This document shows positions 26,499 to 52,102 of a stretch of 64,000 nucleotides of DNA, in pieces. The stretch lies in the IMG/VR virus record IMGVR_UViG_3300028864_000016, positions 62,001 to 126,000 of that record; one strand, 5' to 3'. The notes below the pieces were generated by a model. The model did no database searches and was not told where the DNA came from. It was given only the letters and a program-made list of their open reading frames with translations. Position 1 is the first letter of the stretch. Each line of letters opens with the position of its first letter. Position numbers and translations under genes: made by a program.

Positions 26499-26546
26499 GA
26501 GAATTTCTCTTGGCTTATTTTATTGAAAAAATAAGGAGGAAAAAGT

Positions 26547-31790: not shown

Positions 31791-31805
31791 GGAGTGTGGA
31801 TAATT

Positions 31806-32735: not shown

Positions 32736-33522
32736 AATTGATGGAAAAGTTATTAAAGGATGGTATCAAGATACTAATAACGATAAATGGTATCATTTAA
32801 ATGAGTCAACTGGTGTTTTAGATACTGGATGGTTTCAAGATAAAGACTCTAGATGGTACTATCTTGATGAACAAAATGGAGATTTAAAAACAGGATGGAT
32901 TCAATTAAAATCTGTATGGTTTTATCTTGAATCTTCTAGCAATGGCTATATGGGAGAGTGTTATATTAATAGAACTGCAATAATTGATAGTAGGTCTTAC
33001 ACATTTAATGAAAATGGACATATTATTGAAGATAGTAATGTTAGTGATTCTTTAGTTTCAGAAGATTGTATTTCATTCGTGAAATCTTTTGAAGGATTTT
33101 TCCCGAACAAATACTACGATTGCGTTGGTGTTTTGACCCAAGGATATGGACTTACCGGAAAAGAAATTGCTAATTTGCCCGATGAAATTACAGAAGAACA
33201 AGCTAGTAATTTATTAAAAGAATTAATTAACTCTAATTATGCTCAAGTAATAAAAGATGATTTAGATTCTAAAGGCATAACATTAACTCAAAATGAATTT
33301 GATGCATTATGTTCATTTGCATATAATTGTGGAACGGATGCTCTTTTACATCAATCTACATTATATAGAAACGTGTGTAATGGAATTAAAGATGCAGATA
33401 CTATTACTTCTAATTTTAAAGCATGGTCTAATGGTGGAGGTAAAAGAATAGAAGGTTTATATCGTAGAAGAACTAAAGAAGCTAACATTTTTAATAATGC
33501 AGATTATACAGGAAACAATTAA
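32710..33522 (+). CDS. Endolysin: N-terminal cell-wall-binding repeats plus C-terminal GH24 lysozyme
   Basis: GWYQD/KWYHL repeats; FEG...YYDCVGVLTQGYG (E-x8-D-x5-T); QNEFDALCSFAYNCG; GLYRRRTKE. Confidence 0.9.
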   Translation: MNQWKWCVEIDGKVIKGWYQDTNNDKWYHLNESTGVLDTGWFQDKDSRWYYLDEQNGDLKTGWIQLKSVWFYLESSSNGYMGECYINRTAIIDSRSYTFNENGHIIEDSNVSDSLVSEDCISFVKSFEGFFPNKYYDCVGVLTQGYGLTGKEIANLPDEITEEQASNLLKELINSNYAQVIKDDLDSKGITLTQNEFDALCSFAYNCGTDALLHQSTLYRNVCNGIKDADTITSNFKAWSNGGGKRIEGLYRRRTKEANIFNNADYTGNN

Positions 33523-33557
33523 ATAAATTAAAACAAAATTTTAAGGAGGAATATATT

Positions 33558-33890
33558 ATGGACAGTTTTTTAACATGGGAATACGTTGCGACATTTGCAG
33601 GTGTGGTATTTGCTACAAATTTATTTGTTAATTTTACAAAAGAACTACCTTATATTAAAAATATATCAACTAAATATTATACATCTTTAGTTGCTTTTGT
33701 ATTAATAATATTATCTAGTTTGACATTATCTACTTTTAATTTCAAAGATTTACCTTTAGTAATATTAAACAGTATATTAGTTACTTTTACTGCCACTGGG
33801 GGATATGATTTTACATATAAGAAAGTTACTAATACTGAAATTGTAAATGATAAAACTGCCACAGTTCAAGAAACTAAAACAGTAGAATAA
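33558..33890 (+). CDS. Holin
   Basis: Three hydrophobic helices with charged C-tail, directly after the endolysin. Confidence 0.75.
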   Translation: MDSFLTWEYVATFAGVVFATNLFVNFTKELPYIKNISTKYYTSLVAFVLIILSSLTLSTFNFKDLPLVILNSILVTFTATGGYDFTYKKVTNTEIVNDKTATVQETKTVE

Positions 33891-34128
33891 TAAATTATAA
33901 GTAAGAAAAACACTTTAAATCAATTCTTTTAAAAGGACTTAGATGCAATATTCTAGGTCTTTTTATTATATTTATTTTTAATGGAGTTCATCTATATATG
34001 GTGAATTACTAAAAAATAAATCAAATTGGATAGATAGGAAGTCATGAGCCTATTGATAAGGGGTAAATTCCTACACCCTTTCCAATGTATTAAAAGTAGG
34101 AAAATAAATCAAGAAAGTAGGAATAAAC

Positions 34129-35796
34129 ATGTATAGTAAAGAAGAACTAAAAACAATGGATAAGGATATTAAAGTAAAGAAATTCCTTAAATTAATTTAT
34201 AGGGGTTTTGATGAAGATGAAGAATATATAAGGATATTTCAAAATAATGAAACTAGAAATACTCCAGCAACAGAAACTAAAGTAAAATTCTATAATGATA
34301 TTGATAGTGTTGTTAATTATGTTACAAGTGGTACTAAATACAATAAAAATACATATTTTCAACTAGCAACAGTTGATGATAGTGGTGAAGGTAAAATTGA
34401 AAATTTGCTTTATCGATATTGTATTGGACTTGATTTTGATAAAAAGGAATTAGGTGAAGATTTTGACCATTTAGATATATTAAACTTGTTCAAGCAATAT
34501 AAAATTCATTTTCATTGTCTCATAGATTCAGGTAATGGATTTCATGTATATATTTGTATTAATAAAACAAATAAACTTGATATGGTTAATGAAGTTCAAA
34601 AAGCATTATGTGAGAAGTTTGGAGCGGATAAATTTGCTATTAAGAAAACACAGATTTTGCGAATTCCATATTCATATAATATTAAAGATGAGGATAAAAC
34701 AAAATTAGTAAAGATAGTTGCAATGGATAACAGAGATGAAATTAGACCATATGATATAGAATTTTTATATGAAAAGAATTGTAAAAATACAGTTATAAAT
34801 AATCCTAGTGAAAAGAAAATTACCTATATGATTAATAATACTAATATTCCAAAATGTATAACTAAAATATTAGAAAATGGAACTATTGAAGGAGATAGAT
34901 ATTTAGATCTCCAAAAAATAGTTATTAATCTAAGACAAAGAAATAAAACAGTTGAAGAAATAATATTAGTATGTAAATCATGGGCAGAAAAGAGTAGCTA
35001 TAATGACAACTTAGAGTATAGAATCAAAAATATATATGACAATTTAAAATATGTACATATGGAATGCAAAGAATGTGATAATAAAAGTGAATGCTTTAAT
35101 TTTACAGAATCGGAATTTGACTTTAATTCATTAGCTGATGAAGATGGAGTAATTTATGAAACTTATCAATTAGAAGATAAAATAACAAAGAAAATTAGAA
35201 ATAAACAAAATGGAGGGATTAACATGTTAAATGGAAATGAAATTTTAATATTAAATGTATTAAGGTTAGAATATGATAATCCAAGACCACTTACCAAAAA
35301 TGGTACAGATATGAAATTATTAATGAGAAGTATAACTCATAAAAATAAATCTTGTTTATCTGAAAATACAGTAAGAGAAACTTTGATTAGTTTAATTGAG
35401 AAAAAATATGTATTAGAAGAGATTGGGTTAAGAAATAAAAAACATTATAAATTTAATCCAATAAGAACTACTTTAGATAAAACAATAAAAATAAGTTATA
35501 TGGCAACAGTATTATGTATTTGTAAACAAATTAGTACAAATGAATTAGCATTATACATATTAATGAGATACTTACATAAGCAACAATTATTAGAAAATAA
35601 AACAAAAGGAAATCTATTCACAATGACTCAATCTGATTTAGCTAAAGCATATTATGGAAATAGTACAACTGAAAATCAAACACATATAAGTAAAATGATA
35701 AAGAATTTATTAGATTGTCATATTATTGATATTTATGATATTGAACAAAGTAAGAATAATGGATTTGAATATTATAGATATAGACTTAATAGCTAG
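34129..35796 (+). CDS. RepB-type (AEP superfamily) primase/replication initiator with C-terminal winged helices
   Basis: IGLDFD (DxD), DSGNGFHVY (SGxGxH) and QILRIPYSYN motifs; C-terminal HTH-like SQSDLAKAYY-type segment. Confidence 0.75.
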   Translation: MYSKEELKTMDKDIKVKKFLKLIYRGFDEDEEYIRIFQNNETRNTPATETKVKFYNDIDSVVNYVTSGTKYNKNTYFQLATVDDSGEGKIENLLYRYCIGLDFDKKELGEDFDHLDILNLFKQYKIHFHCLIDSGNGFHVYICINKTNKLDMVNEVQKALCEKFGADKFAIKKTQILRIPYSYNIKDEDKTKLVKIVAMDNRDEIRPYDIEFLYEKNCKNTVINNPSEKKITYMINNTNIPKCITKILENGTIEGDRYLDLQKIVINLRQRNKTVEEIILVCKSWAEKSSYNDNLEYRIKNIYDNLKYVHMECKECDNKSECFNFTESEFDFNSLADEDGVIYETYQLEDKITKKIRNKQNGGINMLNGNEILILNVLRLEYDNPRPLTKNGTDMKLLMRSITHKNKSCLSENTVRETLISLIEKKYVLEEIGLRNKKHYKFNPIRTTLDKTIKISYMATVLCICKQISTNELALYILMRYLHKQQLLENKTKGNLFTMTQSDLAKAYYGNSTTENQTHISKMIKNLLDCHIIDIYDIEQSKNNGFEYYRYRLNS

Positions 35797-35976
35797 TTAG
35801 TGTCAGTTGATTGTTAGCCAACTAATATATAATGTACTATATAATATAGACCAAAGTTGAGGTGGTAAAGTTTAATAATGGCTATATCACTAGGTTTAAA
35901 TAGTATCATAGAATGTAATTTATCTATACCAAAAACATGAAACTGAATAAATTAATATAAATTAAGGGGTAATTAA

Positions 35977-36279
35977 ATGAGTGGAGTATATATTTTAAAT
36001 AATGTTAATAAAAATAAATCAGACAAGCTATATGTAAAAATTGGATGTAGTAAAGACATTTTAAAAAGAATATCTCAGATAAGAAGTTCATTTAGGTTTA
36101 ATGGTAACTTAGATGAACTTTATTTATATAAAACTATAGAATGTACGGAATATAAACAACTTGAGAAAATTTTACATCAAATAATGAAGTCAAGAAAGAT
36201 AACTAATGAGTGGTTTCTTACTGAGGAAAGCTTTTTACTGAATAGGTTAAATATGGTTGATTTAGGTAGATACAAGTAA
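35977..36279 (+). CDS. T5orf172/GIY-YIG-like small protein
   Basis: GVYIL...YVKIGCSKDILKRISQI...LEKILHQ...NEWF. Confidence 0.7.
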   Translation: MSGVYILNNVNKNKSDKLYVKIGCSKDILKRISQIRSSFRFNGNLDELYLYKTIECTEYKQLEKILHQIMKSRKITNEWFLTEESFLLNRLNMVDLGRYK

Positions 36280-36481
36280 ATAAATTAAGAGAATGATAAA
36301 AGGAGATTGAATAAGAAATCTAGTCTCCTTTTATTAAATGAAAAAATCCACTTCAAATTCATCTTTTAACAACAGTTATTTTTATAAGATTTATTAAAAT
36401 TAGTAAGTCTTATAAAATAACTATTGCAAATATTATAAAAGAGTCAACTAAACGAATAAAAATATAAAGGAGGAATTAATT

Positions 36482-37291
36482 ATGGGATTTGATGAAGTAC
36501 AATACGCTTTAGGTAAAAAAAATAGAAAAGTAACATTGCCGAGTAATACAAATGTTCCAGTTGGTGGAATAGATATTAATACAAAAATTAAAGATGTAGA
36601 TATCAATGATTTATTTACAAATATGCTAATAAGAAGTTTAGCCCCAAAAACAAATCTTAAATTTTATGATTCATTAGGTGATATTATAGATACTAGCTTA
36701 ATAAGAACCACAGGAGTTCCACTATTAATAAAAACAATAAAAGCAATATCAGAAAAGTCTACTGAATCCGATATTATAGTAAGTATGCAAACATATTCAA
36801 ATCCCATAATAAATGATTTCTCTAAAATAGACATAGAACCAAATTCAAGTTTAAATGAATGGACTTTTAATAATATAACAATAGATGAAACAACAACATT
36901 TTCTGTTACAACAAGTAATGAAAAAGGTTTTATTGGAAAATATAATACAGTTTTTAATTTTGTAAATTGTTGTTATGTGGGACTAATGCCTATTGAAACT
37001 ACAATAGAAACAATAACTCAAGAAGAAATAAAAAATGGTACAACTATATTACAACAAAAAAATACTATAAACAATTTGTTTAATGGAATTGGTAAAATAT
37101 TTTTTGCATATGACTCTACTTGGGGAAATGCTAAAACAATAGTTGATGTGATGAACAACGTTAATATTATAAGTGCATTTGAAAAAAAGAATTTAGTGAT
37201 TTCTAATGAAAGTGGAACTGTAACATATATCCTTTATCTAGCCAATGTAAGAGGTAATTATAGTGATAGTGAAGTATCATTAAAATTTTAG
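36482..37291 (+). CDS. Virion-associated hypothetical protein (second fibre cassette)
   Basis: First gene of the co-oriented cassette; beta-rich; CYVG...IFFAYDSTWG pattern seen in tail-associated proteins. Confidence 0.4.
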   Translation: MGFDEVQYALGKKNRKVTLPSNTNVPVGGIDINTKIKDVDINDLFTNMLIRSLAPKTNLKFYDSLGDIIDTSLIRTTGVPLLIKTIKAISEKSTESDIIVSMQTYSNPIINDFSKIDIEPNSSLNEWTFNNITIDETTTFSVTTSNEKGFIGKYNTVFNFVNCCYVGLMPIETTIETITQEEIKNGTTILQQKNTINNLFNGIGKIFFAYDSTWGNAKTIVDVMNNVNIISAFEKKNLVISNESGTVTYILYLANVRGNYSDSEVSLKF

Positions 37292-37318
37292 AAGATATTG
37301 AGAGGTGAATAATATTAG

Positions 37319-37870
37319 ATGAGAAGCATTAAAAATTATATAAAAGAATACATTAAAAAATTTATATTACTTTTATTACATGATTATATTGAAAAAACTA
37401 AACGAGATATAAAAGAAGAGTTAATAGAAAATGGTAGAGTATATATTGAAGAAAATATATCTAATAAGATACAAAGCAACATAGAAGATATAAATAAAAA
37501 TAAAAAGAGTATTGAAGAATTGAAAGAAAAAGAATCTAACAACCACTATGTATCACTTCCTAATGAAAAAATTATAGGGAGTCAAGAAAATATAAAAGAT
37601 GGAACTATTTCATACGATTATTTAGGTAGTAAAATTATTGAAAATATATATTTGGACGGGAAATGGATACAACTGAACAACAATAATAATATAAAAGAAG
37701 TACAAACAGTGAAAAATTATGTGAATATAGATAATGGTTTAAGAGAATTTGATAAAGATTTAATATTTTCTAAGGATAAATCTATCGTTATTACAGATAG
37801 TTTGAACCACGATGATAAATACAAAATAACAATAAAAAGTTCAAATCTATTTTTAGAAAAGATAACATAG
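37319..37870 (+). CDS. Hypothetical protein (second fibre cassette)
   Basis: 183-aa ORF with coiled-coil N-half; RBS GAGGTG. Confidence 0.4.
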   Translation: MRSIKNYIKEYIKKFILLLLHDYIEKTKRDIKEELIENGRVYIEENISNKIQSNIEDINKNKKSIEELKEKESNNHYVSLPNEKIIGSQENIKDGTISYDYLGSKIIENIYLDGKWIQLNNNNNIKEVQTVKNYVNIDNGLREFDKDLIFSKDKSIVITDSLNHDDKYKITIKSSNLFLEKIT

Positions 37871-37887
37871 AAAGGAGGTGTTTATAA

Positions 37888-40578
37888 ATGAGTGATTTTT
37901 TAAAAGGTAATCCGTTAATAATGCCAAATTATTTTCTCGGAGATGTACCAATGGACACAAAAACAAAAGCATCATCAGTATCAGAAGTTTTAACAACTCT
38001 TACAAAAGAAAATAGATATACAGGATTAAAAATATATTGTGAGTCGGAAAGAGAATTTTATTGTTTTAAATATGGAATCGAAGACACTGATTTTATAAAA
38101 ATTAGCGAAGTAATTCCACATATTAAGGTTGATAATTATGCGTCATTACCTACTATCAATCAAGATACAACAGTTGTATACATAACATCAGATACAATGA
38201 TTGAATATACATGGGATGGTAGTGATTGGAGTACATTTAAAAATATAGCAGATAATATATCGTTTAACAATAATCCAAATGGAACTGACATATACCCAAA
38301 TGATTATCAAACTGTTCAAAAGGTATTGGAACAAAATAAAAAAGAAGTTGATTCAAAAGTAGATAAAGAAATTGGTAAATCTTTAATACTAGATACCGAA
38401 ATAGCAAGACTTCAAGGAATTTCAACAAATTCAAATAAAGTTGAAATTTCTAATATAAATGGGAATATTAAAATAGATGGTGTAGAAAATATAGTTTATA
38501 CTTTACCAAGTAATACTGAAACTGTAGAAGGTAGTAACTCTAAAGTAGATATAGCTATTAATAATATTAAAGATAATGTTACTAATGATGGTAATACCTT
38601 AGCTAAACTTAGAAACCTAATAGGTGGGATACAAACATTATTAAATTCTGACGATATAAACTTAGATAGCTTACAGGAAATAGTAGGTTATATAAAAAAT
38701 AACAAATCATTGATTGATGGTATTACTATTAATAAAATAAATTATACAGATATAGTAAATGTTTTAACAAGCATAGAAATAAATAAACCTTTATCAGCCA
38801 ATCAAGGAAAGATTTTAAATGATTTAATTACAACTTTAGCTACTACTACTCAATCAGCTTTAAATTTAAAATCTGATATATCTTATGTAAATCAACAAGA
38901 CGCCACAAAAGTAGATAAGGTTACAGGCAAGAGTTTAGTTTTAGATACAGAAATATCTAAGTTGGCTACTATTTCAACTGGGGCAGAAGTAAATGTACAA
39001 TCTGATTGGAGTACTGATAGTGAAATAGATGACAGTTACATAAAGAATAAACCTGATTTAACCTTAAAACAAGATATAGTAGATAATCAATTAAATACTG
39101 CAAATAAATCTATAGTATATAGTATAAATGAAGTAAATAGTGACTTAATAAATAATGGCATAAAACCAATTTATCAATCAAATCCATTTGGATTCGATTC
39201 ACCTGTCACAGAGTCACGAATCCAACAATGGTTTAGTGACAACGGTTCTCCTATTAATTGGCAAGGATATGATACTAATAATCCATATAAAGACTGCAAA
39301 ATGACAATGGGAGTTAATGAGAGTTATGTTCTTTGGATAGGAACTAATTATTGGTACTACGGAAAATTCGAAAATGGTAACTATTGGGAGAATATGACAC
39401 AAATGACTCCTAGTGATTTTACTCTAGGATATATTAGTATGATTGCAACAGGGAATAAGTTTTTATCTGATAAAGCTGATTTAATTCATACTCACACTAA
39501 AACTGATATCACTAATTTTACGCACACACATTTAAAATCAGATGTAACAGACTTTCCTCATATTCATGTTAAAACGGATATAACTAATTTCTCACACACG
39601 CATGTTAAAAATGATATAAGTGATTTAGCAAATGCAACTACTACTGTAAGTGGATTGATGAGCAATACTGATAAAACTAAACTAGATAATATTTACTCAT
39701 CATCTTCTCCCAGTAGAGATTTTAAAACTGCATATAGTGCTAGTGGCGTATATAGGATAACAAACCCACTTAGTAATATTCCCCCAGGTTATGAGCAAGT
39801 ATACGGTGATTTTTGGGTAGATGTTAAATATCTTGATGCTAATAATCAAAACCTGACTGCTTATGATATTAAATCTTCTGCTATTTGGAGATTATCTTGC
39901 GTTGCTGGAACATGGAGTGAATGGTCTAGATTAGACTATGGTAATTCAGCTTCTTCTGATAAAATAAATTCACCTGATACTAGATCACTATCTGGGTATT
40001 CACTTCCATCTGAATACATATCAAAAGGAAAAGGTGTTATATATGAATTTAAAAACATTACAAATATAGCATTAAGTCCTACAACTTTTCCAGTAATAGG
40101 TACAATGTCATATTGTCAAGTAGAAACAAAAATACCTTGGAATGACGCTAGTGGCGGTTATCCTACACAAACAGCTACTTGTTTAGGATATGTTTTCACA
40201 AGAACTGGTACTAGTAATTCAACTTGGAGTGCTTGGAGTCAATTTATGACAGTTCCATCTAGTATTGACTATGTTATAGAAACATGGCGTAGTGGAACAG
40301 AATGGAGAAGAACATATAAGAGTGGTTGGGTAGAACAAGGTGGATATGTTACTATTAAATCAGATGATTGGACGTCGATTACTTTGCCTGTCACTATGAT
40401 AGATGTTAACTATAGTGTTAGTGTATCTGTACGTGCTGACTCTGGTGTTGGCAGTAATGGTTCAGATACTTGCTACTATGGTAATATCGCTACTACAGGG
40501 TTTAATATAGCCAGTGACTATAGTGGTGCGTCATATAAAAATGGAATAAGATGGGAAGTTAAAGGACAAAAAGCATAA
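37888..40578 (+). CDS. Fibre protein with HxH repeats, knob-like segments and gp53-like C-terminal domain
   Basis: KVDKxxGKSL repeats, VQSDW...YIKNKP, four HxH repeats, WSEW/WSAWS knob ends, RTYKSGWVEQGG...WEVKG C-terminus. Confidence 0.7.
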   Translation: MSDFLKGNPLIMPNYFLGDVPMDTKTKASSVSEVLTTLTKENRYTGLKIYCESEREFYCFKYGIEDTDFIKISEVIPHIKVDNYASLPTINQDTTVVYITSDTMIEYTWDGSDWSTFKNIADNISFNNNPNGTDIYPNDYQTVQKVLEQNKKEVDSKVDKEIGKSLILDTEIARLQGISTNSNKVEISNINGNIKIDGVENIVYTLPSNTETVEGSNSKVDIAINNIKDNVTNDGNTLAKLRNLIGGIQTLLNSDDINLDSLQEIVGYIKNNKSLIDGITINKINYTDIVNVLTSIEINKPLSANQGKILNDLITTLATTTQSALNLKSDISYVNQQDATKVDKVTGKSLVLDTEISKLATISTGAEVNVQSDWSTDSEIDDSYIKNKPDLTLKQDIVDNQLNTANKSIVYSINEVNSDLINNGIKPIYQSNPFGFDSPVTESRIQQWFSDNGSPINWQGYDTNNPYKDCKMTMGVNESYVLWIGTNYWYYGKFENGNYWENMTQMTPSDFTLGYISMIATGNKFLSDKADLIHTHTKTDITNFTHTHLKSDVTDFPHIHVKTDITNFSHTHVKNDISDLANATTTVSGLMSNTDKTKLDNIYSSSSPSRDFKTAYSASGVYRITNPLSNIPPGYEQVYGDFWVDVKYLDANNQNLTAYDIKSSAIWRLSCVAGTWSEWSRLDYGNSASSDKINSPDTRSLSGYSLPSEYISKGKGVIYEFKNITNIALSPTTFPVIGTMSYCQVETKIPWNDASGGYPTQTATCLGYVFTRTGTSNSTWSAWSQFMTVPSSIDYVIETWRSGTEWRRTYKSGWVEQGGYVTIKSDDWTSITLPVTMIDVNYSVSVSVRADSGVGSNGSDTCYYGNIATTGFNIASDYSGASYKNGIRWEVKGQKA
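39484..39627 (+). repeat. Four tandem 36-bp (12-aa) repeats xHxHxKxD(I/V)xxF
   Basis: IHTHTKTDITNF/THTHLKSDVTDF/PHIHVKTDITNF/SHTHVKNDISDL. Confidence 0.85.
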
Positions 40579-40680
40579 CACCTATATTAACATAAATTAA
40601 AGACTTTAGTTTAAAATTAATTTACCACTATGATAAAAATGTATTTATTAAAAATTGAAAATAGAAAGGATTGATAATTA

Positions 40681-40878
40681 ATGGCATTAGATTTAAATCA
40701 ACAAGGACACTTGATTAATTACCCAGTAAAGCAATGGACAGCACATTCATTAGATGAGTTTCCAATAGAAAGTGACTCATTATCTATACCTCATGGAAGT
40801 TTTTGTACATTAGTAGCAAAGCCAGATTATATTGTGTATGTTTATGATTCGATATTAAAAGAATGGTATGAATTATAA
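40681..40878 (+). CDS. Small hypothetical protein (fibre cassette)
   Basis: 65 aa with AAAGGA RBS. Confidence 0.5.
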   Translation: MALDLNQQGHLINYPVKQWTAHSLDEFPIESDSLSIPHGSFCTLVAKPDYIVYVYDSILKEWYEL

Positions 40879-40906
40879 AAAATAGCAAAGAAAGGAGTGA
40901 TAATTA

Positions 40907-43048
40907 ATGGAGGGAATAGTTGTTTATGCTTTACTTAATAAAAAGTTAAAAGCACTTGCAAGTGGAATATCAAGCATTGTACCAATATCAAATGGATTAA
41001 GATTTACAACTACTAATGGTACGAATATAGATGTAACATTGCCAACTCATACACATTCTAATTTAGATACCATTTTAGAGAAATTTACTTTAGATGGAAG
41101 TAATAAATTATTATTTGATGGACAATCTTTAGATAAGCAATTAGATTTAACAAATTATGTTCAAAAAGAAACTGGAAAAGGATTATTTACAGGAAATTAT
41201 AATGATTTAATAAATAAACCAGCCTCACAACAACCTAATAAATCAATTTCTTTTACTTCAAGTGATTGGGTTCAAGATGCAGTTGATTTAGATAAATATA
41301 CTTTAGAAATAACACATGGATTAAAAACCATTGATATTGTAGGAGTTATATATAATTCTTCAGGGGAAGAAGAAACAATAGGCTTTAAACCATTGGATAT
41401 TGACAGAGTAAGATTAACAAATATCTCACCTACCGATGGAAGGGCAGTTCTAAATTACACTAGCACAATAAATACTGGTACGAATACAGGAATTTCAGAC
41501 TTATCAGGATTTACAAGTGATGATTTATCAGAAGGGACAAATAATAAATACTTAACACCTTCCGAAAAAACAATAGTTGGCTCAATAAATTTAACATCTC
41601 CTAGTGATAAACAGGTGTTATCTTATGATAGTGCTACTGGAAATTTAGTTAATGAAACTATTAATGATGAAAAGGTTAAGTTAACTTCATCTAGTACAAC
41701 GGCAGAATATATTGGAGATTTAATAGATAATTCAACCATACAAATATCTGGAAATAAAATAGTTGCGAAGAGTTTACAAGGGCAAACGGTAACTTTAACA
41801 GAATTGAATTATATTAGTGGTCTTAATGAGAATATTATGACTAAATTCTCTAACTTTCTAAATGGTGGGATTCAGGTTTATACAACTAAAACTTTTAGTT
41901 CTTATAGTGAATTATTAAGTTTTAATTATGCAACCTTGACAACAGGAAAAATATATTTAATGTATGTTTCAAAAGATGAAACACATAGCAATAATGGAAC
42001 TACATATATGTGCCATTCTACTACTAACACTACAACTAATCTACCATATTATTGTGGTTTATCTACAGCTACTCAAAGGGATTTCGGTGTTGATAAAGTT
42101 GATTTGACTAGTGAAGTAAAAAATCAACTTCCCCAAGCCAATATAGATATGATAGGAATTTTAAAGACAATTGATATAATTGATGATTTAACTCATACTG
42201 ATACAGATAAGCCATCTAGTGCAAATCAAGTAAAAATTTTAAAAGGATTAGTTGATAGTAAGACTCAAACTAATGATATTGGTATTGCCGGAAATTTAAC
42301 TGATACATATTCTATTGATAAGATTATTGAATTGTTGAACAATAAACAAAATAAAATATATACACAAAGTACACAACCTAGTTCTCCAACTATAAATACA
42401 ATATGGATTGATACAACAAATAGTACAAATTATACGATTAAATGTTATAATGGCACAGGATTTATCCAAGTAGGTAGTTCTGGTGGAATTACAATTGAAA
42501 ATTGGTCTAGTTTAACATCATATATAAGTAATTCAAGTTTTGTTATATACAATAGTAATTTATATAGATGTAAGACAACACATATAAGTACAATGACTTT
42601 TGAATCTGCAAATTGGGATTTAGTAGGTGGTGATGTTACTAAAACATATCTTGAAACAATAATTAATACAATATATCCAGTTGGGCATATATTAATGACA
42701 GAAAATAGTGCAAATCCAAATACATATTTAGGCGTAGGAACTTGGGTAGCTTATGGAGCTGGTAGAGTTCCGGTTGGTATAGATGGAACACAAACTGAAT
42801 TTAATGCCATTGGTAAAACTGGTGGAACTACGAAACATACGCTTTCTATTGAAGAACTTCCAAATCATACTCATGGTTATTATTATCCAAGTAACACTAC
42901 AGTTGGGCGAGAAGGTGGTGTTGTAGCTGAGGATACGGCAAAAGGTACAAGTTATACTACTTTACAAACAAGTGCCATAGGCTTAGGACAAGCACATAAT
43001 AATTTATCTCCATATGTCGTATGTTATATGTGGAAACGTACAGTATGA
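40907..43048 (+). CDS. Fibre/baseplate protein with T4 gp10-like C-terminal domain
   Basis: C-terminal IYPVGHILMTENSANPNTYLGVGTWVAYGAGRVPVG...HTLSIEELPNHTH...HNNLSPYVVCYMWKRT. Confidence 0.7.
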   Translation: MEGIVVYALLNKKLKALASGISSIVPISNGLRFTTTNGTNIDVTLPTHTHSNLDTILEKFTLDGSNKLLFDGQSLDKQLDLTNYVQKETGKGLFTGNYNDLINKPASQQPNKSISFTSSDWVQDAVDLDKYTLEITHGLKTIDIVGVIYNSSGEEETIGFKPLDIDRVRLTNISPTDGRAVLNYTSTINTGTNTGISDLSGFTSDDLSEGTNNKYLTPSEKTIVGSINLTSPSDKQVLSYDSATGNLVNETINDEKVKLTSSSTTAEYIGDLIDNSTIQISGNKIVAKSLQGQTVTLTELNYISGLNENIMTKFSNFLNGGIQVYTTKTFSSYSELLSFNYATLTTGKIYLMYVSKDETHSNNGTTYMCHSTTNTTTNLPYYCGLSTATQRDFGVDKVDLTSEVKNQLPQANIDMIGILKTIDIIDDLTHTDTDKPSSANQVKILKGLVDSKTQTNDIGIAGNLTDTYSIDKIIELLNNKQNKIYTQSTQPSSPTINTIWIDTTNSTNYTIKCYNGTGFIQVGSSGGITIENWSSLTSYISNSSFVIYNSNLYRCKTTHISTMTFESANWDLVGGDVTKTYLETIINTIYPVGHILMTENSANPNTYLGVGTWVAYGAGRVPVGIDGTQTEFNAIGKTGGTTKHTLSIEELPNHTHGYYYPSNTTVGREGGVVAEDTAKGTSYTTLQTSAIGLGQAHNNLSPYVVCYMWKRTV

Positions 43049-43200
43049 TAAAATATTACATAACAAATTAAAAGAAACAAAAACCCATTAAATGACTCAT
43101 TTTAATAATTGCATAAACCAAAGATTAGAAGGAGGATTCAGATGAAATATTTTGAGTCCTTTTATCTTATAAAAATAAAGATAGAAAGGAATGATGAATA

Positions 43201-44544
43201 TTGGAGAACTTTGAAATAAACAAACAAGTTCAGTTAGTAAAAGAAAAAGAAACTATATTATCTAAATTAACATTAGGTAATAATGAAAAGGTCTTAATAG
43301 ATGGCGAAGCAATTTTAACTAGCAGTTCTAGTGATTTAACTGAATATATAAAAACGGCAGATGCTGATTTAAAATATGAACTAAAAGATATAGCTGGGTA
43401 TGTTCATACTGATAATAATTATAATGACGTAGAAAAGGCTAAGGTAGAAGCAATGACTAATGGTTCAAAATATATTGGATTATTTCCTACTTTAGCTGAA
43501 AGAGATATTGTTACAACTTTAAATATTGGCAATTGGTGTACAGTAGATGTAGATTCTAGTCATAGTAATAAAAAAACTAAATTTTATTATGATGGAACTC
43601 AGTGGATTTACGATGGAGAATATCAAGAAGATTCTTTTGGTATTGATGATAATTCCATAGACAGTACACAAAATGGGTGGTCTGCTTCAAAATTAAGGAA
43701 TGAGTTAGCTTTAAAAGCAAATAAAGATGGAACAGATATTGATTTAACAACATTCCAAGGAGATATAATTCCAATTACTAATGGAATACAAAATATTGGT
43801 TCTCCAACTAATAGGTTTGGTACTATATACGTAAACGAAGCAAAATTAAGCACAAACACTTTATATATAGGTGATACGCCTGTAATCGGAACGAATCAAG
43901 ATACTATAATGGTTAAAGCAGATTTAGATCAGAGTTTAACAGTTAAAACTACAGGAGTAGGAACTACAAAAGTCATATCAGCGAGTGGAGTTGAATTATC
44001 AACATCAGGAATGAATGCAAATATAAATGTACAAGCAACAGGACAAGGTGCTAATGCGAATTTAAGTGCAACCAATCAAGTTAATTTGAACTCACCAAAT
44101 GTAAATATTCAAGGTTCTACAAATGTAACTGGTGGTATTTCAGTTGATAATTTAACGGTACGTGGAAATGTAGTAATGAATGGAGAAAGTTTTATATCTA
44201 ATGCTACAACGGTTCAAATTGAAGATAATATAATAGAATTAAATAAAAATGAAGTTGGGTATGGAGTTACTTCTGGCAGGGCTGGTATAAAAATTAATAG
44301 GGGCGATGCTGACGATTATTTGTTAATATTTGATGAAACTGATGATAAAGCTAAAATAGGAACAGATTCAACATTGAAAGCAATTGCAACTGAAGACTAT
44401 GTAAATGCATTATTAAATAACAAATTATCTTCTAGTAATATAAAAGCTGGTTCAAATATTACTATAACAACAAATGGTAATGATATAACGTTAAATGCTA
44501 CAGGTGGTTCTGGATTATCTGCTTATTCTGAATTCGTAATATAA
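43201..44544 (+). CDS. Fibre-like structural protein
   Basis: TTVQIEDNIIELNKNE...AGIKINRG beta-helix-like motif common in phage fibres; TTG start with AAAGGA RBS. Confidence 0.55.
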   Translation: MENFEINKQVQLVKEKETILSKLTLGNNEKVLIDGEAILTSSSSDLTEYIKTADADLKYELKDIAGYVHTDNNYNDVEKAKVEAMTNGSKYIGLFPTLAERDIVTTLNIGNWCTVDVDSSHSNKKTKFYYDGTQWIYDGEYQEDSFGIDDNSIDSTQNGWSASKLRNELALKANKDGTDIDLTTFQGDIIPITNGIQNIGSPTNRFGTIYVNEAKLSTNTLYIGDTPVIGTNQDTIMVKADLDQSLTVKTTGVGTTKVISASGVELSTSGMNANINVQATGQGANANLSATNQVNLNSPNVNIQGSTNVTGGISVDNLTVRGNVVMNGESFISNATTVQIEDNIIELNKNEVGYGVTSGRAGIKINRGDADDYLLIFDETDDKAKIGTDSTLKAIATEDYVNALLNNKLSSSNIKAGSNITITTNGNDITLNATGGSGLSAYSEFVI

Positions 44545-44563
44545 AAAAGGGTGTGAGAATAAA

Positions 44564-44716
44564 ATGGCAGATATAACTTTAGATAAAATAGATAAAAAAG
44601 ATGGACAAGTAGTCACACAAGAAGATATTGCAAAAATAGATAAAAATATGTCAACCATAGAAACAGTAATTAAAGACATTGGAACGACGTTGACTTATTC
44701 AGAATTTGTAATATGA
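44564..44716 (+). CDS. 50-aa mini-protein MADITLDKIDKKDGQVVTQEDIAKIDKNMSTIETVIKDIGTTLTYSEFVI
   Basis: Translated by hand; AAGGGTG RBS; N-terminus 15/36 identical to the N-terminus of 29229..31190; C-terminal YSEFVI identical to that of 43201..44544. Confidence 0.8.
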   Translation: MADITLDKIDKKDGQVVTQEDIAKIDKNMSTIETVIKDIGTTLTYSEFVI

Positions 44717-44749
44717 AAAACAAATTAAATAAAAAGGAGATGATGCTAA

Positions 44750-46750
44750 ATGGCAAATCCAAATATTAATATAGGTGTTATAAATGAATCTTCGGTAGCG
44801 TCTCAAACACAAGTCGGAAAAATCCTTTTTACGGAACAAGGAAATCAATACATAATAAAATCAGATGGTAGCAAATTAAAAATTAGCGATATTATAGTAG
44901 TTGATACACTTCCTAGCACAAACATTCAATCACATAAAATATACATTTTAAGCACCCAAAATTACAGTATGAACTATTATGACGGGTCAGCTTGGCATAT
45001 ATTAGGTGGTAGTTCAGACAGTCAAATTTCAATAGGTACAACACCACCAACAGATACAAATAAATTATTCATAGATATTACAGATAAAACTAAACCAATA
45101 CTTAAATGGTACGATTCTACAACTACTTCATGGATTAATATTAGTTCAACTCAAATTCAAAGTGATTGGAATCAAACTGATAATTCAAAAGCAGATTTTA
45201 TTAAAAATAAACCTAGTGGAAGCAATGCAACTTCTATAAATAATATTCTAGTTGATGATACAACTAGAACTAATGGTACAGGTTTGTTTTACAACTCAGG
45301 TACTGGAAAATATGAGAATGCAACAGTTAATATTGCTGGCATTGTTGGTTCTAGCCAAATCACAAAGGCTGGAGAAAATGTTACAATAGCTAGTGGCTCT
45401 GAAGTTATTTTTAATCATATTGCAAGTGAGAATATAGTCCCAAGTATAGAAGAACAAATTGCAGGAAGTTCTGTTACAGATACACATGTTGATTTTTCAG
45501 ATAGTAGTAAATATACATTACAAGATAGTGGAAAAATACTAGTTGGAAATAATAAATCCGAATTAGATATTTATACTAAATTATTAATGCATATGGACGA
45601 TAGTAATTTTACAGATGTTTGTGGACATACTGTTACAAATAATGGTGTTACTTTAGATACTAGTATTAAAAAATTTGGAACAGGAAGTGCTAAATTTAAT
45701 GGAACTAGTTCTTATTTAAGTTTACCAACTTCAATAGATTGGAATTTAGGAAATAGAGATTTTGAAATAAAAGCTAATGTGACATTAAATTCAATAGCTA
45801 GTACAGGAACATTGTGTGGTATTTGGAATTCTAATAAATATTCTTTTATCATACAATTTTCATCAAATGGTCTAAGCTTTGTTGTAACAACTGATGGTAC
45901 TGGTAGCACAGTTACAAATTATACGGCAACTTATACATGGGCAGTTGGTGAAAATTATCATATAGCAATAGAAAGGTATTCTAATAATTTATATATGTTC
46001 GTAAATGGAGTACTAATATCTACTTATTCAATTACAAAAACTATATATGCATCAACTTCTCCTTTAGATATTGGTAGGAGCACCGATTCTGGTGGATTAG
46101 CATATTTAAATGGAAATATAGATGAATTTATATTAAAAAAGGGTAAAGCTTCTAATATAACAAGTTTTTCACCACCAACTTCGATATCCCCTATTCCATA
46201 TTTAACATCAAATATACCAACATACTTAAAAACAACAGGAACAAGTAATTTTAGTTTAACAACAATAGATACAATAACATCGTTAACTATACCGGTAACA
46301 TTGCCGAGTGCCAATACAACTTGTAAGTGCTTAGTATCACTTGATAATGGTATAAATTGGTTATATAGGTCTAGTGGAATCTTGTATAAATATACTGGAG
46401 ATTTAACCACAAGTTGGACAAGTTCGAATTTAAATACTGATTTACAAACTTACTTTTCGAATATAAATTTAAATACTTTAACTAATGATTTAAGTAGTTT
46501 AGGTATAACTCCTATTAGTTTAAATTTCGCTTTCCAACTTTCAACTTCTGATTTAGCTCAAACACCTTCAGTATCTGCAATTACAATGGTTTATGTTAAT
46601 AAATCACATAATGAATTTGCAAGTTTCGGAAGTTACTCAGATAGTTATAGCATGTACGGAGTAAAGAGAATAAATTCTTCTAGTATAGGTGTAAAGAATA
46701 AATCGGCAGTTACTAAAGTAATTAAGGTGAATTTAGTTACTAGTATATAA
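44750..46750 (+). CDS. LamG/concanavalin-like domain virion protein
   Basis: KKFGTGSAKFNGTSSYL...DFEI...NYHIAIERYSNNLYMFVNG...NGNIDEFILKKG LamG pattern. Confidence 0.75.
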   Translation: MANPNINIGVINESSVASQTQVGKILFTEQGNQYIIKSDGSKLKISDIIVVDTLPSTNIQSHKIYILSTQNYSMNYYDGSAWHILGGSSDSQISIGTTPPTDTNKLFIDITDKTKPILKWYDSTTTSWINISSTQIQSDWNQTDNSKADFIKNKPSGSNATSINNILVDDTTRTNGTGLFYNSGTGKYENATVNIAGIVGSSQITKAGENVTIASGSEVIFNHIASENIVPSIEEQIAGSSVTDTHVDFSDSSKYTLQDSGKILVGNNKSELDIYTKLLMHMDDSNFTDVCGHTVTNNGVTLDTSIKKFGTGSAKFNGTSSYLSLPTSIDWNLGNRDFEIKANVTLNSIASTGTLCGIWNSNKYSFIIQFSSNGLSFVVTTDGTGSTVTNYTATYTWAVGENYHIAIERYSNNLYMFVNGVLISTYSITKTIYASTSPLDIGRSTDSGGLAYLNGNIDEFILKKGKASNITSFSPPTSISPIPYLTSNIPTYLKTTGTSNFSLTTIDTITSLTIPVTLPSANTTCKCLVSLDNGINWLYRSSGILYKYTGDLTTSWTSSNLNTDLQTYFSNINLNTLTNDLSSLGITPISLNFAFQLSTSDLAQTPSVSAITMVYVNKSHNEFASFGSYSDSYSMYGVKRINSSSIGVKNKSAVTKVIKVNLVTSI

Positions 46751-46783
46751 ATAATAAATTAATATAGATAGGAAGTGGTCTAA

Positions 46784-47143
46784 TTGGTTGGATATGTATA
46801 TTTTTCTCAATCAAAAATTATAAATAACAAAATAAATAATGTTGAATATATAGATTCAGGTTGTAAAGAAATTAAGGGAACGAATGATAATGGAGATTCT
46901 ATATGTTCTTTATTTAATGGAGGTTCAGATTTTATAATTCTTGAAAGTGATACTATTAATAAAAATATAGGTGAAGAAATTAATTTAGATAGTTTGATAG
47001 ATACTAGAGATTTTTTCTTAAAAGGTAAGGATTATTGGTATCAAGAACAAATTAAAAACAATAAAGAAACTATTAATAATCAAACTGAATTAGTTAATTC
47101 ATTAATAGAAATGGTAATAACAACAACATTACCAACTACTTAA
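46784..47143 (+). CDS. Putative fibre-assembly/chaperone-like protein
   Basis: 119 aa after the fibre genes, C-terminal coiled coil; positional inference. Confidence 0.35.
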   Translation: MVGYVYFSQSKIINNKINNVEYIDSGCKEIKGTNDNGDSICSLFNGGSDFIILESDTINKNIGEEINLDSLIDTRDFFLKGKDYWYQEQIKNNKETINNQTELVNSLIEMVITTTLPTT

Positions 47144-47159
47144 TAGGAGGTGAAAGGAG

Positions 47160-47354
47160 GTGATACAAATGGCAAGTTTTAAAAAAGTTTTAGAATATGA
47201 CATAAATACTAATCATGCAAAACATGATAGAAGTTATTATGAAACTGTTATTGCAACATGGTTATTAAAAAATTATTTAACTTCTGATGAAGCAGATTCT
47301 TTATTAGCTTTATTAGATACATGTTATCCACAAACAGAAACTCAAGCTCAATAA
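47160..47354 (+). CDS. Small hypothetical protein ending the fibre cassette
   Basis: 64 aa, GGAGG RBS; followed by terminator 47395-47427. Confidence 0.45.
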   Translation: MIQMASFKKVLEYDINTNHAKHDRSYYETVIATWLLKNYLTSDEADSLLALLDTCYPQTETQAQ

Positions 47355-47394: not shown

Positions 47395-47427
47395 AAAATA
47401 GAGTAGTCGATATCACTACTCTATTTT
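47395..47427. terminator. Bidirectional intrinsic terminator
   Basis: aaaatagagtagt-cgatatc-actactctatttt. Confidence 0.75.
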
Positions 47428-50898: not shown

Positions 50899-51813
50899 AT
50901 GGGCAAAAGAGTACATATACATTATTTCACAAAGGAGAAAAACGATTTAGTAAATAAAGATAACAGAAAAAAATATGACAAATATCTAAAGAGTAATATT
51001 ATAAAGAACAAGGATGTTAAGGAAACAACTTATCTCGTTTACGAGAATTATTTCAACCAATTTTTGGTTTATCTTGCTGAGGAATGGGAAAACCTTGATT
51101 TATATTCAGAAGATTTTAGTGATAATGCTATTGATATTATGGAGGGGTTCATGTCTTTTTGTCAAGATACACTTCAAAATAATAAGAAAATAATTAATAC
51201 TAAAATATCAGCAGTATCTAGTTTCTTTTTATGGAGCGTTAAAAGAAAGGAAATTAAATTTCATCCCTTTCAAGGTCAATTAGATCGCATGAAGGGGGCG
51301 AGAGAAGAACATATTATAGGTAATTATTTTTTAAATGATGAACAAATATTAGCTATTCAAACTGGACTAATAGAAAATCCAGACAATAAATTTGATTTAT
51401 TAGATATAGTTCTATGGAACGTTATGTTGGATTCAGCTAATAGAATTGGTGCAATTGATAGATTAACACTATCTAGCTATGATGTAGACGAATGTTGTTT
51501 TAGAGATATACGTGAAAAAGAAGGCTATATTATTGACGTATCTGTAAATGAAAATACAGTGGAATTAATTCATACGTGGTTAGAATATAGAAAAGAACAT
51601 ATGGATAATTTAGAAATAGACGCTTTATTTATTAGTAGATACGGTGGAGTTTATAAAAAAATGTCTAAAGGAACTTTACAAGCAAGAATTAAAAAGATGG
51701 GTACTATTATAGGGATTGATGACTTTAGGTCTCACTGCGTCAGAAAAACCGCATCTAATAGTATGTTATCTAAGGGTATAGATCCTTCTTTAGTTAGTAA
51801 ATATTTAAACCAT
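50899..51813 (+). CDS. Tyrosine recombinase/integrase, exon 1
   Basis: DSANRIGAI (catalytic R), FRSHCVRKT (HxxR), YLNH (H); lacks the catalytic Tyr. Confidence 0.85.
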
Positions 51814-52102
51814 AAACTACAACTTGTGGCTTAATGGAGTAATCCATTTCGAATAACTCGCTTAATACGGGGAAGGCTAAATCTTTAAAGAGACATGCTA
51901 ACCTACCGTGCTAAATTATTCTATATAAATAAATTATTAGAATATAAAAGCCTAACGACTATTCCTTCGGGAAGTACCTATAAGTATAGGGAAATGGTGA
52001 GTCTCCTACTAGGAGAGTGATATAGTCTAATCTTATGGGAAATCATAAGCAGTTCATAAGAGAACGGTATAGGAATTAACGAACCTATATGAATATAAAA
52101 TG
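51814..52102 (+). mobile_element. Group I self-splicing intron (289 nt, no ORF) in the tyrosine recombinase gene
   Basis: P1: exon UUAAACCAU pairs with GUGGCUUAA with terminal U-G; P10: exon-2 AAG pairs with CUU; R aacgacta; S gatatagtcta; terminal G52102; splicing gives YLNH-KDVSTTLAFY. Confidence 0.85.

What the first reader, a model, noticed from the sequence alone, without database searches (positions are those of the whole stretch)
36482..47354. A second, 11-kb fibre/adhesin cassette outside the tail operon
Seen: ten co-oriented genes after the lysis and Rep genes encode fibre hallmarks (HxH repeats, gp53-like and gp10-like C-termini, LamG) and share short motifs (KVDKxxGKSL, QSDW...IKNKP), although the main tail module already has fibre and spike genes. 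Inference: an accessory branched fibre or head-fibre system extending host range or binding spores/mucus, perhaps expressed separately.
Basis: partly seen in the sequence, partly recalled or inferred. Interest (0 to 1): 0.6.

Follow-up and report, generated by a model that had tools for sequence, protein, structure and literature searches.

The report
Variable tail-fibre module of a jumbo phage
The ten genes are real phage fibre genes, but related phages carry a fibre cluster at the same spot, so this is most likely the lineage's normal, fast-changing host-recognition module and not an extra accessory system.

Summary
Window 36482-47354 carries ten co-oriented ORFs. Four encode long fibre-type proteins.
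- 896 aa: four HxH motifs at a 12-residue period, then two tandem C-terminal knob domains of the R-pyocin / AP22 gp53 type.
- 713 aa: a Gp10_C domain.
- 447 aa: a widely shared fibre core.
- 666 aa: a LamG lectin domain.

The window lies in a 218-kb, 26% GC virus record from peat. No sheath gene was found, so it looks like a siphovirus. Its closest known relative is Clostridium phage c-st (SPbeta-like).

The cassette is separated from the tape-measure/Dit/hub/spike genes by a homing endonuclease, an endolysin, a holin-like gene, a 555-aa protein and a T5orf172 gene.

The "accessory second system" reading is not supported. Three related viral contigs have a fibre cluster at the same position, between the tail-tip genes and a tyrosine recombinase. 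Its content is mosaic. A trio is conserved: the 269-aa protein, the 183-aa protein and the first ~175 residues of the big fibre. The distal parts are swapped. A contig from another peat sample is 100% identical over 16.6 kb and then diverges sharply just before the LamG fibre gene.

This is an ordinary hypervariable receptor-binding module in a new phage lineage. Attachment site, virion presence and receptors are untested.

The parts
36294..36336 (+). Terminator-like hairpin followed by a U-run, between the T5orf172 gene and the first cassette gene. It is a weak copy of the recurrent hairpin + YTTTTATTATGTAAAAA element.
   Evidence: RNA fold -17.5 kcal/mol, z = -4.5. Pattern match at 36328 with 3 mismatches.
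36482..37291 (+). 269-aa protein with no known family. It is the conserved first gene of the trio. Inferred to be a structural or adaptor protein for the big fibre.
   Evidence: No Pfam, PHROG or NCBIfam hit. Only 4 clusters were found among 5.8 billion, at 65-99% identity. It is always followed by the 183-aa homologue and the fibre N-terminus in G001 and G003. The AF2 model failed.
37319..37870 (+). 183-aa protein: a region rich in charged residues that reads as helical or coiled-coil, followed by a conserved C-terminus. Second gene of the conserved trio.
   Evidence: Homologues in G001 (C-terminal 67 residues 84% identical; middle expanded) and in G003 (62% identical). No family hit.
37888..40578 (+). 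896-aa long fibre. Parts: a conserved N-terminal anchor (residues 1-175), a shaft with two KVDKxxGKSL repeats, Phage_fiber_rpt, four HxH motifs (residues 534-572; nt 39487-39603) and two tandem knob/lectin-like domains (residues ~685-896; nt ~39940-40575).
   Evidence: N-terminus 73-81% identical in G003 and G001, while the distal parts differ. C-terminal domain: 1485 representatives at E<=1e-3. AF2 pLDDT is about 90 for the last domain. Foldseek: R2 pyocin fibre 6ct8 E=2.8e-5, AP22 gp53 4mtm E=9e-3.
38354..38955 (+). Pair of 50-nt direct repeats (KVDK motif) 552 nt apart. An in-frame 552-nt (184-codon) skip between them appears in contigs from two wetland RNA libraries.
   Evidence: Repeat family D2, 74% identity. 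Joint 38373->38926 in runs X19 and X20.
40681..40878 (+). 65-aa accessory protein that travels with 713-type fibres. Possibly an adaptor or chaperone.
   Evidence: 29% identical over its full length to the 68-aa ORF of G001. Weak matches (E 0.02-0.08) link it to the N-terminal part of G001's 151-aa ORF, and link that ORF to G002's 64-aa ORF, which directly precedes the 713-like 859-aa fibre.
40907..43048 (+). 713-aa fibre with a C-terminal Gp10_C head domain (residues 585-712; nt 42659-43042). Its N-terminal part is semi-conserved in relatives.
   Evidence: PF21939, E=2.9e-29. T4 gp10 structure 2fkk, E=3e-4. It is the only Gp10_C in the genome. The same domain ends tail or structural proteins of Streptococcus, Blautia and Microbacterium siphophages. 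N-terminus 31-33% identical in G001 and G002, which carry other distal domains.
43127..43165 (+). Terminator-like hairpin inside the cassette, between the 713-aa and 447-aa genes.
   Evidence: RNA fold -15.9 kcal/mol, z = -3.7.
43201..44544 (+). 447-aa fibre (TTG start) with a widely shared central core (residues ~185-390).
   Evidence: 52 homologues share about half the protein. They are joined to PTR, collagen, Mtd_N, Phage_fiber_2, BppL_N or LamG modules. Conserved core defined. Atlas look-alikes carry BppL_N + Mtd_N. A profile search gives a weak hit to a 'tail tip gp86' structure, E=0.02.
44564..44716 (+). 50-aa ORF that looks like a recombination scar. Its N-terminus resembles that of the SGNH spike gene (29229), and its last six residues equal the end of the 447-aa protein.
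   Evidence: JGI also calls this gene. The divergence from contig L001 begins inside it.
44750..46750 (+). 666-aa fibre: N-terminal virion-protein module, QSDW...IKNKP motif, LamG lectin domain (residues 317-460; nt 45698-46129) and a C-terminal domain.
   Evidence: PF13385, E=1e-11. phrog_25416 'virion structural protein' on residues 6-138. G002 has a 684-aa LamG counterpart whose C-terminus is 52% identical. The allele is replaced in L001.
46784..47143 (+). 119-aa accessory protein downstream of the LamG fibre. Possibly an assembly factor.
   Evidence: 42% identical to the 128-aa ORF in the corresponding position in G002. No family hit.
47160..47354 (+). 64-aa ORF, the last gene of the cassette. 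Function unknown.
   Evidence: ORF list. JGI calls a 61-aa gene here. No family hit.
47395..47427 (.). Palindromic terminator-like hairpin that closes the cassette.
   Evidence: RNA fold -13.7 kcal/mol, z = -5.3.
31794..36279 (+). The insert that separates the cassette from the tail-tip genes: homing endonuclease (31794-32735), endolysin (32710-33522), holin-like gene (33558-33890), 555-aa primase-polymerase-like protein (34129-35796) and T5orf172 gene (35977-36279).
   Evidence: The content of this insert differs between relatives.
21541..31190 (+). Tail-tip genes of the main module: Dit-like (21541-22737), 309-aa protein, 881-aa hub-like protein, 778-aa fibre with a beta-propeller (26547-28883) and 653-aa spike with an SGNH/GDSL esterase domain (29229-31190).
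   Evidence: Homologues in G001 and G002 share the N-termini but have swapped C-terminal domains.
50899..51834 (+). Tyrosine recombinase that follows the fibre cluster in every relative.
   Evidence: PF00589, E=1e-17. 53% identical in G003. Integrase-family genes also follow the cluster in G001 and G002. 28% identical to the c-st Xer-type recombinase CST104.

Best explanation
The cassette is the distal, hypervariable receptor-binding part of the tail gene set of a clade of peat-dwelling, c-st/SPbeta-like jumbo siphoviruses.

It encodes four long, presumably trimeric fibres with different distal binding domains:
- 896 aa: an HxH shaft plus two pyocin/gp53-type knobs.
- 713 aa: a Gp10_C head domain.
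- 447 aa: a core shared with Mtd_N/BppL_N-carrying fibres.
- 666 aa: a LamG lectin domain.

It also encodes two conserved small structural or adaptor proteins (269 and 183 aa) and small accessory proteins (65, 119 and 64 aa, plus a 50-aa scar).

The conserved N-terminal parts would anchor the fibres on the tail tip. The distal parts bind cell-wall saccharides and are exchanged by recombination, which tunes host range. Insertion of non-structural genes (homing endonuclease, lysis genes, a primase-like gene, T5orf172) cut the locus off from Dit and the hub. The whole clade inherited that arrangement.

Shown: the gene content, the domain identities, the positional conservation, the mosaicism and a natural recombination breakpoint. 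Inferred: trimeric state, attachment to the tail tip, saccharide receptors and the roles of the small proteins.
For: Phage type:
- Tape measure, Dit-like and hub genes are present and no sheath gene was found.
- The YonO-type RNA polymerase is 50% identical to that of c-st.
- The relative PMBT24 is a siphovirus with thin fibres at the tail tip (PMC11035940).

Domains. The R-pyocin fibre knobs and lectin foot bind LPS sugars (PMC11871291). Gp10_C ends tail or structural proteins of siphophages.

Position conserved, content mosaic:
- G002 keeps the flanking genes at 83% and 85% identity but only fragments of the cassette.
- G001 keeps the 269/183/896 genes at 67-81% identity and nothing of the 447, 666 or Gp10_C parts.
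- G003 keeps the trio with a 482-aa Collar-domain fibre. Its cluster begins with a YomF_N protein, a marker of the SPbeta/c-st tail operon.

Natural recombination:
- Contig L001 is identical to the window over 27888-44542 and then differs at 245 positions in the next ~1 kb.
- Shaft length varies by repeat units.
- Contigs from two wetland RNA libraries lie on 37075-40139.
Against: - No virion proteomics or microscopy exists for this uncultured phage.
- The attachment site is not shown. The complex prediction gave no answer and the 269-aa model failed.
- BLAST finds no homologue of the cassette proteins in c-st, where the annotated tail genes all precede the endolysin. The split arrangement is therefore specific to this clade.
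- Only three relatives could be examined, and two of them are incomplete contigs.
- RNA-library contigs cannot prove transcription.
Confidence: 0.7

Rival explanations
1. This is an accessory second fibre system, acquired on top of a complete tail adsorption apparatus, that gives this phage extra targets.
For: The main tail module already has a beta-propeller fibre and an SGNH esterase spike. About 5 kb of unrelated genes, plus a hairpin, precede the cassette. Sequencing depth in one peat run drops from ~26 to ~5 after 40600, which hints that the downstream half is not present in every strain.
Against: All three relatives have a fibre cluster at the same position. The flanking genes and the conserved trio diverge about as much as core genes do. 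G003's cluster starts with the tail-operon marker YomF_N. Contig depth is a poor measure of abundance.
Confidence: 0.1
2. These are head, neck or collar fibres that decorate the capsid or the connector, not the tail tip.
For: Attachment is untested. One homologue of the knob domain and one homologue of the 447-aa core carry the phi29 head-fibre Pfam domain. The N-terminus of the 666-aa protein has an insignificant Head_binding hit, E=0.19.
Against: No window protein matches a head-fibre family. The folds and domains found are those of tail fibres and baseplate proteins. The locus lies at the far end of the tail genes, more than 30 kb from the head genes, and in G003 it is contiguous with YomF_N and pectate-lyase-type spikes.
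Confidence: 0.1
3. The fibres belong to a separate mobile element or satellite-like island (primase-like gene, T5orf172, fibres, RusA, recombinase) that sits inside the phage genome.
For: A primase-polymerase-like motif pair in the 555-aa protein, T5orf172, a RusA-like gene and a tyrosine recombinase flank the fibres. The genome contains many homing endonucleases.
Against: No flanking direct or inverted repeats were found. The BLAST comparison finds no homologue of the 555-aa protein in the examined parts of G001 and G003, yet the fibre cluster and the recombinase are there. The 555-aa and RusA-like proteins are as conserved with G002 (83% and 85%) as core virion proteins are. c-st has the RusA-like and Xer-type genes at the same end of its late region without these fibres.
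Confidence: 0.05

Closest known systems
R-type pyocin and P2-type tail fibres, and Acinetobacter phage AP22 gp53 (PDB 6ct8, 6cl6, 6cxb, 4mtm)
   Same: The 896-aa protein ends in two tandem ~105-residue beta-sandwich domains. These match the pyocin knob/foot region over 203 columns and match gp53. An array of HxH motifs precedes them. From my own knowledge, HxH motifs bind metal ions in the trimeric shafts of T4 gp37 and of pyocin fibres.
   Different: Sequence identity is only 13-15%, and the Pfam Gp53-like_C hit is below threshold. The carrier is a sheath-less phage of a low-GC host, not a contractile tail or tailocin. No downstream chaperone of the pyocin type was recognised.
Receptor-binding modules of SPbeta and Clostridium phage c-st (yomI-yomD tail operon; CST131-CST109)
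   Same: Same phage supergroup: YonO-type RNA polymerase, tape measure annotated as two ORFs, and a Xer-type recombinase and a RusA-like gene at the end of the late block. G003's cluster contains a YomF_N protein.
   Different: In c-st the annotated tail genes all precede the endolysin. Here and in G001 and G002 a lysis gene lies between the tail-tip genes and the fibre cluster. BLAST detects no similarity between the fibre proteins of the two phages.
T4 baseplate wedge protein gp10 (C-terminal domain, PDB 2fkk)
   Same: The last 128 residues of the 713-aa protein match PF21939 at 103 bits and match the 2fkk sequence.
   Different: Only the C-terminal domain is shared. The rest of gp10, which docks gp11 and gp12, is absent. 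In siphophages this domain ends tail or structural proteins, so this protein is not a baseplate wedge orthologue.
Multi-fibre or branched adsorption systems (CBA120/G7C tailspike branches, T5 side and central fibres, multi-depolymerase jumbo phages)
   Same: Several different receptor-binding proteins in one virion gene set. Conserved N-terminal anchors carry swapped distal domains.
   Different: No gp10-like docking domains were found in the N-termini. Branching was not shown; the complex prediction gave no answer.

Membership tests
Gp53-like_C fibre-tip domain (PF21882; AP22 gp53, R-pyocin fibre knobs) | Profile match above the curated cut-off | tested here: not met
   15.3 bits against a cut-off of 24.9, E=0.03, on residues 811-890. 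The G001 homologue scores 17.2 bits.
Gp53-like_C fibre-tip domain (PF21882; AP22 gp53, R-pyocin fibre knobs) | Homology through intermediates, and the same fold | tested here: met
   11 of 50 homologues from the exhaustive search hit PF21882, best E=7e-7. Foldseek: 6ct8 E=2.8e-5, 6cxb TM 0.55, 4mtm TM 0.48, all with probability 1.00. Model pLDDT is about 90 for the last domain.
HxH metal-binding trimeric fibre shaft (T4 gp37/gp12, pyocin fibres) | Regularly spaced HxH motifs | tested here: met
   HxH at residues 534, 546, 558 and 570. The same period is kept in G001 at 746-782.
HxH metal-binding trimeric fibre shaft (T4 gp37/gp12, pyocin fibres) | Trimer with bound metal ions | not testable with these tools
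   Needs the purified protein or a structure.
T4 gp10 family | C-terminal domain (PF21939) | tested here: met
   103.2 bits against a cut-off of 27. PDB 2fkk E=3e-4.
T4 gp10 family | Full-length baseplate wedge architecture within a contractile tail | tested here: not met
   Only residues 582-712 match. No sheath family was found in the genome.
LamG / concanavalin-A-like lectin domain (PF13385) | Profile match above the cut-off | tested here: met
   45.7 bits against a cut-off of 27.6, residues 317-460 of the 666-aa protein.
Phage head fibre (phi29 gp8.5, PF11133) | Profile match in a cassette protein | tested here: not met
   No hit, even at E up to 10 for the fragments scanned.
Invertible fibre cassette or shufflon (Mu Gin, P1 Cin, R64 Rci) | Inverted repeats that flank alternative fibre C-termini on the opposite strand, next to a recombinase | tested here: not met
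   A tyrosine recombinase lies 3.5 kb downstream. No significant inverted repeats were found, the best being 46 nt at 76%. No antisense fibre ORFs exist.
Diversity-generating retroelement acting on a fibre (BPP-1 Mtd) | Reverse transcriptase plus a template/variable repeat pair | tested here: not met
   No RVT_1 in the 218-kb record. No long direct repeat pair in 31000-53000.
Branched tailspike/fibre systems (CBA120, G7C) | gp10-like docking domains in the N-termini, and demonstrated binding between fibre proteins | tested here: inconclusive
   No such domain in the N-terminal parts. The complex prediction returned no verdict.

The most novel reading that the evidence does not exclude
The conserved pair of 269-aa and 183-aa proteins, which has no relatives outside this small clade, forms a new kind of docking platform. 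This platform would carry several interchangeable fibres as one branched organelle, possibly at a site other than the baseplate (neck or head). If so, the split gene arrangement reflects a structurally separate adsorption device.
Probability: 0.1. Interest if true: 0.6.

Novelty: new member of a known kind. Interest (0 to 1): 0.3.

Why it matters
The result gives a first map of the host-recognition genes of an uncultured, c-st-like jumbo siphovirus that is common in peat. It was found in about 18 peat metagenome runs.

The map shows which parts are fixed anchors and which parts are exchanged in nature. One breakpoint is resolved to within about 50 bases. That is useful for predicting host range and for choosing domains to express for receptor studies.

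It is not a new principle. Scattered, mosaic fibre genes are usual in large phages.

Tried and rejected
- Megablast of the cassette against known phages: no match.
- tblastn of the 896-aa and 555-aa proteins against known phages: almost nothing.
- PDB sequence searches of the four big proteins and of the 555-aa protein: only the gp10 hit.
- NCBIfam: nothing.
- AlphaFold2 of the 269-aa protein with a 4-sequence alignment: pLDDT 31, unusable.
- Complex prediction of 269 aa + 183 aa + fibre residues 1-175: no verdict. This is not evidence either way.
- Rfam over 28500-52500: no RNA family.
- Shufflon and DGR ideas: rejected.
- YomF_N could not be searched in the window because the local Pfam copy lacks PF27067. 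JGI's precomputed hits list it for none of the window's tail genes.
- A handle look-up for the JGI contig failed. It was solved through the IMG/VR copy.
- BLAST against c-st found no homologues of the fibre genes.
- Contexts of two other jumbo contigs that carry the 447-type core were uninformative.
- 'Rep' could not be verified. Only a motif pair was read by eye.
Full report
**What the window is.** The window is bases 62001-126000 of a single 218,173-bp virus record. GC content is about 26%. The record carries:
- a tape measure in two ORFs (14862-16985 and 17326-21180);
- a Dit-like gene (21541-22737);
- a 309-aa protein and an 881-aa hub-like protein;
- a 778-aa fibre whose N-terminus matches a tail-fibre PHROG and whose C-terminus is a beta-propeller;
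- a 653-aa protein with a fibre-like N-terminus and an SGNH/GDSL esterase domain.

No tail sheath family is found in the record, which CheckV estimates at 88% complete. A 926-aa YonO-type RNA polymerase upstream is 50% identical to that of Clostridium botulinum phage c-st. It also matches Enterocloster and SPbeta-like phages. One of these, PMBT24, is a siphovirus with thin fibres at the tail tip (PMC11035940). The DNA occurs in about 18 peat metagenome runs. I take it for a jumbo siphovirus of a low-GC Gram-positive host. The endolysin carries choline-binding repeats.

**The observation.** Ten + strand ORFs fill 36482-47354, and JGI's independent gene calls give the same ten.
- The 896-aa protein has Phage_fiber_rpt, two copies of KVDKxxGKSL, QSDW...IKNKP, and HxH at residues 534, 546, 558 and 570.
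- The 713-aa protein ends in Gp10_C at 103 bits.
- The 666-aa protein has Laminin_G_3 and the same QSDW...IKNKP motif.

The shared motifs are generic fibre motifs. A scan of IMG/VR with the 666-aa protein confirmed 148 stretches, and most of them match little beyond residues ~131-156. BLASTP finds no other similarity among the cassette proteins.

Upstream lie a homing endonuclease, an endolysin, a holin-like ORF, a 555-aa protein and a T5orf172 gene. No library recognises the 555-aa protein. I only read a primase-polymerase-like motif pair in it, so the label "Rep" stays unverified.

**The distal domains.** An exhaustive HMMER search with residues 600-896 of the big fibre found 1485 representatives at E<=1e-3. 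Most match a ~105-residue unit at their own C-terminus, and the query contains two such units in tandem. Eleven of 50 of these homologues hit Pfam Gp53-like_C, although the window protein itself is below threshold.

An AlphaFold2 model built on that alignment has pLDDT around 90 for the last domain. Foldseek places it with the R2 and R1 pyocin fibre C-termini, the cyanophage Pam1 tailspike receptor-binding domain, AP22 gp53 and snail lectins. In R-pyocin fibres these knob and lectin-like domains bind LPS sugars (PMC11871291).

The 447-aa protein has a central core shared by 52 proteins. In these the core is joined to PTR, collagen, Mtd_N, Phage_fiber_2, BppL_N or LamG modules. Atlas look-alikes carry BppL_N and Mtd_N. 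A profile search gives only a weak hit to a "tail tip" protein.

**Relatives.** Four contigs from other peat samples are 98.7-100% identical to the window over the stretches they cover (L001, L003-L005); L001 changes allele at ~44,590 (see "Recombination seen in nature"). Three diverged relatives could be read further: G001 (103 kb), G002 (196 kb, with terminal repeats) and the more distant G003 (92.6 kb).
- G002 has homologues of the endolysin (77%), the 555-aa protein (83%) and T5orf172. Then comes a cluster of different fibres interrupted by two homing endonucleases, then the RusA-like gene (85%). Of the window's cassette it keeps only pieces: the N-terminus of the 713-aa protein at 33%, the end of the 447-aa protein, the C-terminus of the 666-aa protein at 52%, and the 119-aa ORF at 43%.
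- G001 has a different lysin (GH25) and other genes before T5orf172. Then follow a 151-aa ORF, a 556-aa ORF and a hexapeptide acetyltransferase. After these come homologues of the 269-aa (69%) and 183-aa proteins and a 1108-aa version of the big fibre (N-terminus 81%, residues 284-896 67%). It has no counterpart of the Gp10_C, 447 or 666 genes.
- G003 has an uninterrupted 1797-aa tape measure, Dit- and hub-sized genes, and then five non-structural genes (HTH, Ant, PIN). Its cluster follows: YomF_N, two pectate-lyase-type proteins, XepA, the 269 homologue (65%), the 183 homologue (62%), and a 482-aa Collar-domain fibre whose first 174 residues are 73% identical to the window's fibre. Another Collar protein and the recombinase (53%) complete it.

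So the position is conserved while the content is not. The 269/183/fibre-N-terminus trio behaves as a fixed anchor unit with exchangeable distal parts. YomF belongs to the SPbeta/c-st tail operon. This argues that the cluster is the distal part of that operon, cut off by inserted genes. In c-st itself the annotated tail genes all precede the endolysin, and BLAST detects no similarity to its fibre proteins.

**Recombination seen in nature.** Contig L001, from another peat sample, is identical to the window from 27888 to 44542. From about 44590 on it differs at 245 positions over ~1 kb. The change starts inside the 50-aa ORF just before the LamG fibre gene. That ORF looks like a scar: its N-terminus resembles that of the SGNH spike gene, and its last six residues equal the end of the 447-aa protein.

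Contigs from two wetland RNA libraries lie on 37075-40139 and on nothing between 40800 and 42399. Both show an in-frame 552-nt skip between the two KVDK repeats, which gives a shorter shaft. This fits the short G003 and long G001 versions of the fibre. These are contigs, so they show presence in an RNA library, not proven transcription.

In one DNA run the depth falls from ~26 to ~5 after 40600. This hints that strains differ in the downstream half. Contig depth is a weak measure, so I give this little weight.

**Expression.** Terminator-like hairpins stand at the following sites:
- 36294-36336, the head of the cassette;
- 43127-43165, inside the cassette;
- 47395-47427, the end of the cassette;
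- 29154-29186, 31478-31506 and 33930-33965, in and after the main tail module.

The hairpin at the head therefore does not mark the cassette as a special unit.

**Rejected mechanisms.** There is no inversion system: no significant inverted repeats and no antisense fibre ends. There is no DGR: no reverse transcriptase and no template repeat. There are no flanking repeats that would mark an island.

**Verdict.** The fibre nature is well supported. The "accessory second system" reading is not supported. This is the normal, hypervariable receptor-binding locus of a new clade of c-st-like jumbo siphoviruses. Attachment site, virion presence and receptors remain inferred. The AlphaFold model of the 269-aa protein failed and the complex prediction gave no verdict.

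No alternative genetic code was used.

Noticed in passing
window 16946-17281 (Rfam match 16993-17230, + strand): A likely group I intron interrupts the tape-measure gene. RF00028 matches over the full model at 38.3 bits (below the gathering score of 50), E=3.4e-8. G003's uninterrupted tape measure aligns collinearly up to 16946 and again from 17281. The c-st tape measure is also annotated as two ORFs. In G002 the second part carries a further endonuclease-like insert.
   Followed up: partly
window 4073, 29182, 31504, 48342 and 49189 (+ strand); weaker copies at 36328 and 43159: A recurrent element lies just upstream of late genes: a variable hairpin followed by YTTTTATTATGTAAAAA. There are 15 matches at up to 3 mismatches against 5.1 expected by chance. 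The best copies lie 13-40 nt before a gene start. The hairpins fold with z-scores of -3.7 to -5.8. It could be a terminator/promoter unit for the phage's own YonO-type polymerase. This was not tested.
   Followed up: partly
window 29229-31190; G001 homologue at L085:17457-18959: The spike protein keeps its first ~78 residues between relatives but swaps the enzyme domain. It is an SGNH/GDSL esterase here and a polysaccharide deacetylase in G001. This suggests receptor-modifying (deacetylating) spikes.
   Followed up: partly
window 38373-38926: An in-frame 552-nt skip between the two KVDK repeats of the 896-aa fibre gene appears in contigs of two wetland RNA libraries. It was not seen in the two DNA runs laid. 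It is most likely a strain variant with a shorter shaft.
   Followed up: partly
window 34129-35796: This 555-aa protein is 83% identical in G002 and has no match in Pfam, PHROGs (one weak hit), NCBIfam, PDB or known phages. By eye it has LDFD and GNGFHVY motifs like an archaeo-eukaryotic primase-polymerase, and its C-terminal part reads like a DNA-binding region.
   Followed up: partly
window 11683-13521 and 31794-32735; further copies elsewhere in the 218-kb genome and in the G002 cassette: There are many paralogous homing-endonuclease genes (phrog_4538 / GIY-YIG / NUMOD types). Two of them sit inside the fibre cluster of G002.
   Followed up: no
window 48350-48952 and 50899-51834: A RusA-like gene and a Xer-type tyrosine recombinase close the late block, as do CST102 and CST104 in phage c-st (31% and 28% identity). 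This fits a plasmid-like prophage lifestyle as in c-st. That point rests on my own knowledge and was not tested.
   Followed up: no
G001 cassette, L086:7570-8133: A hexapeptide-repeat acetyltransferase gene sits among the fibre genes of the relative G001. It may be a surface-modifying moron.
   Followed up: no
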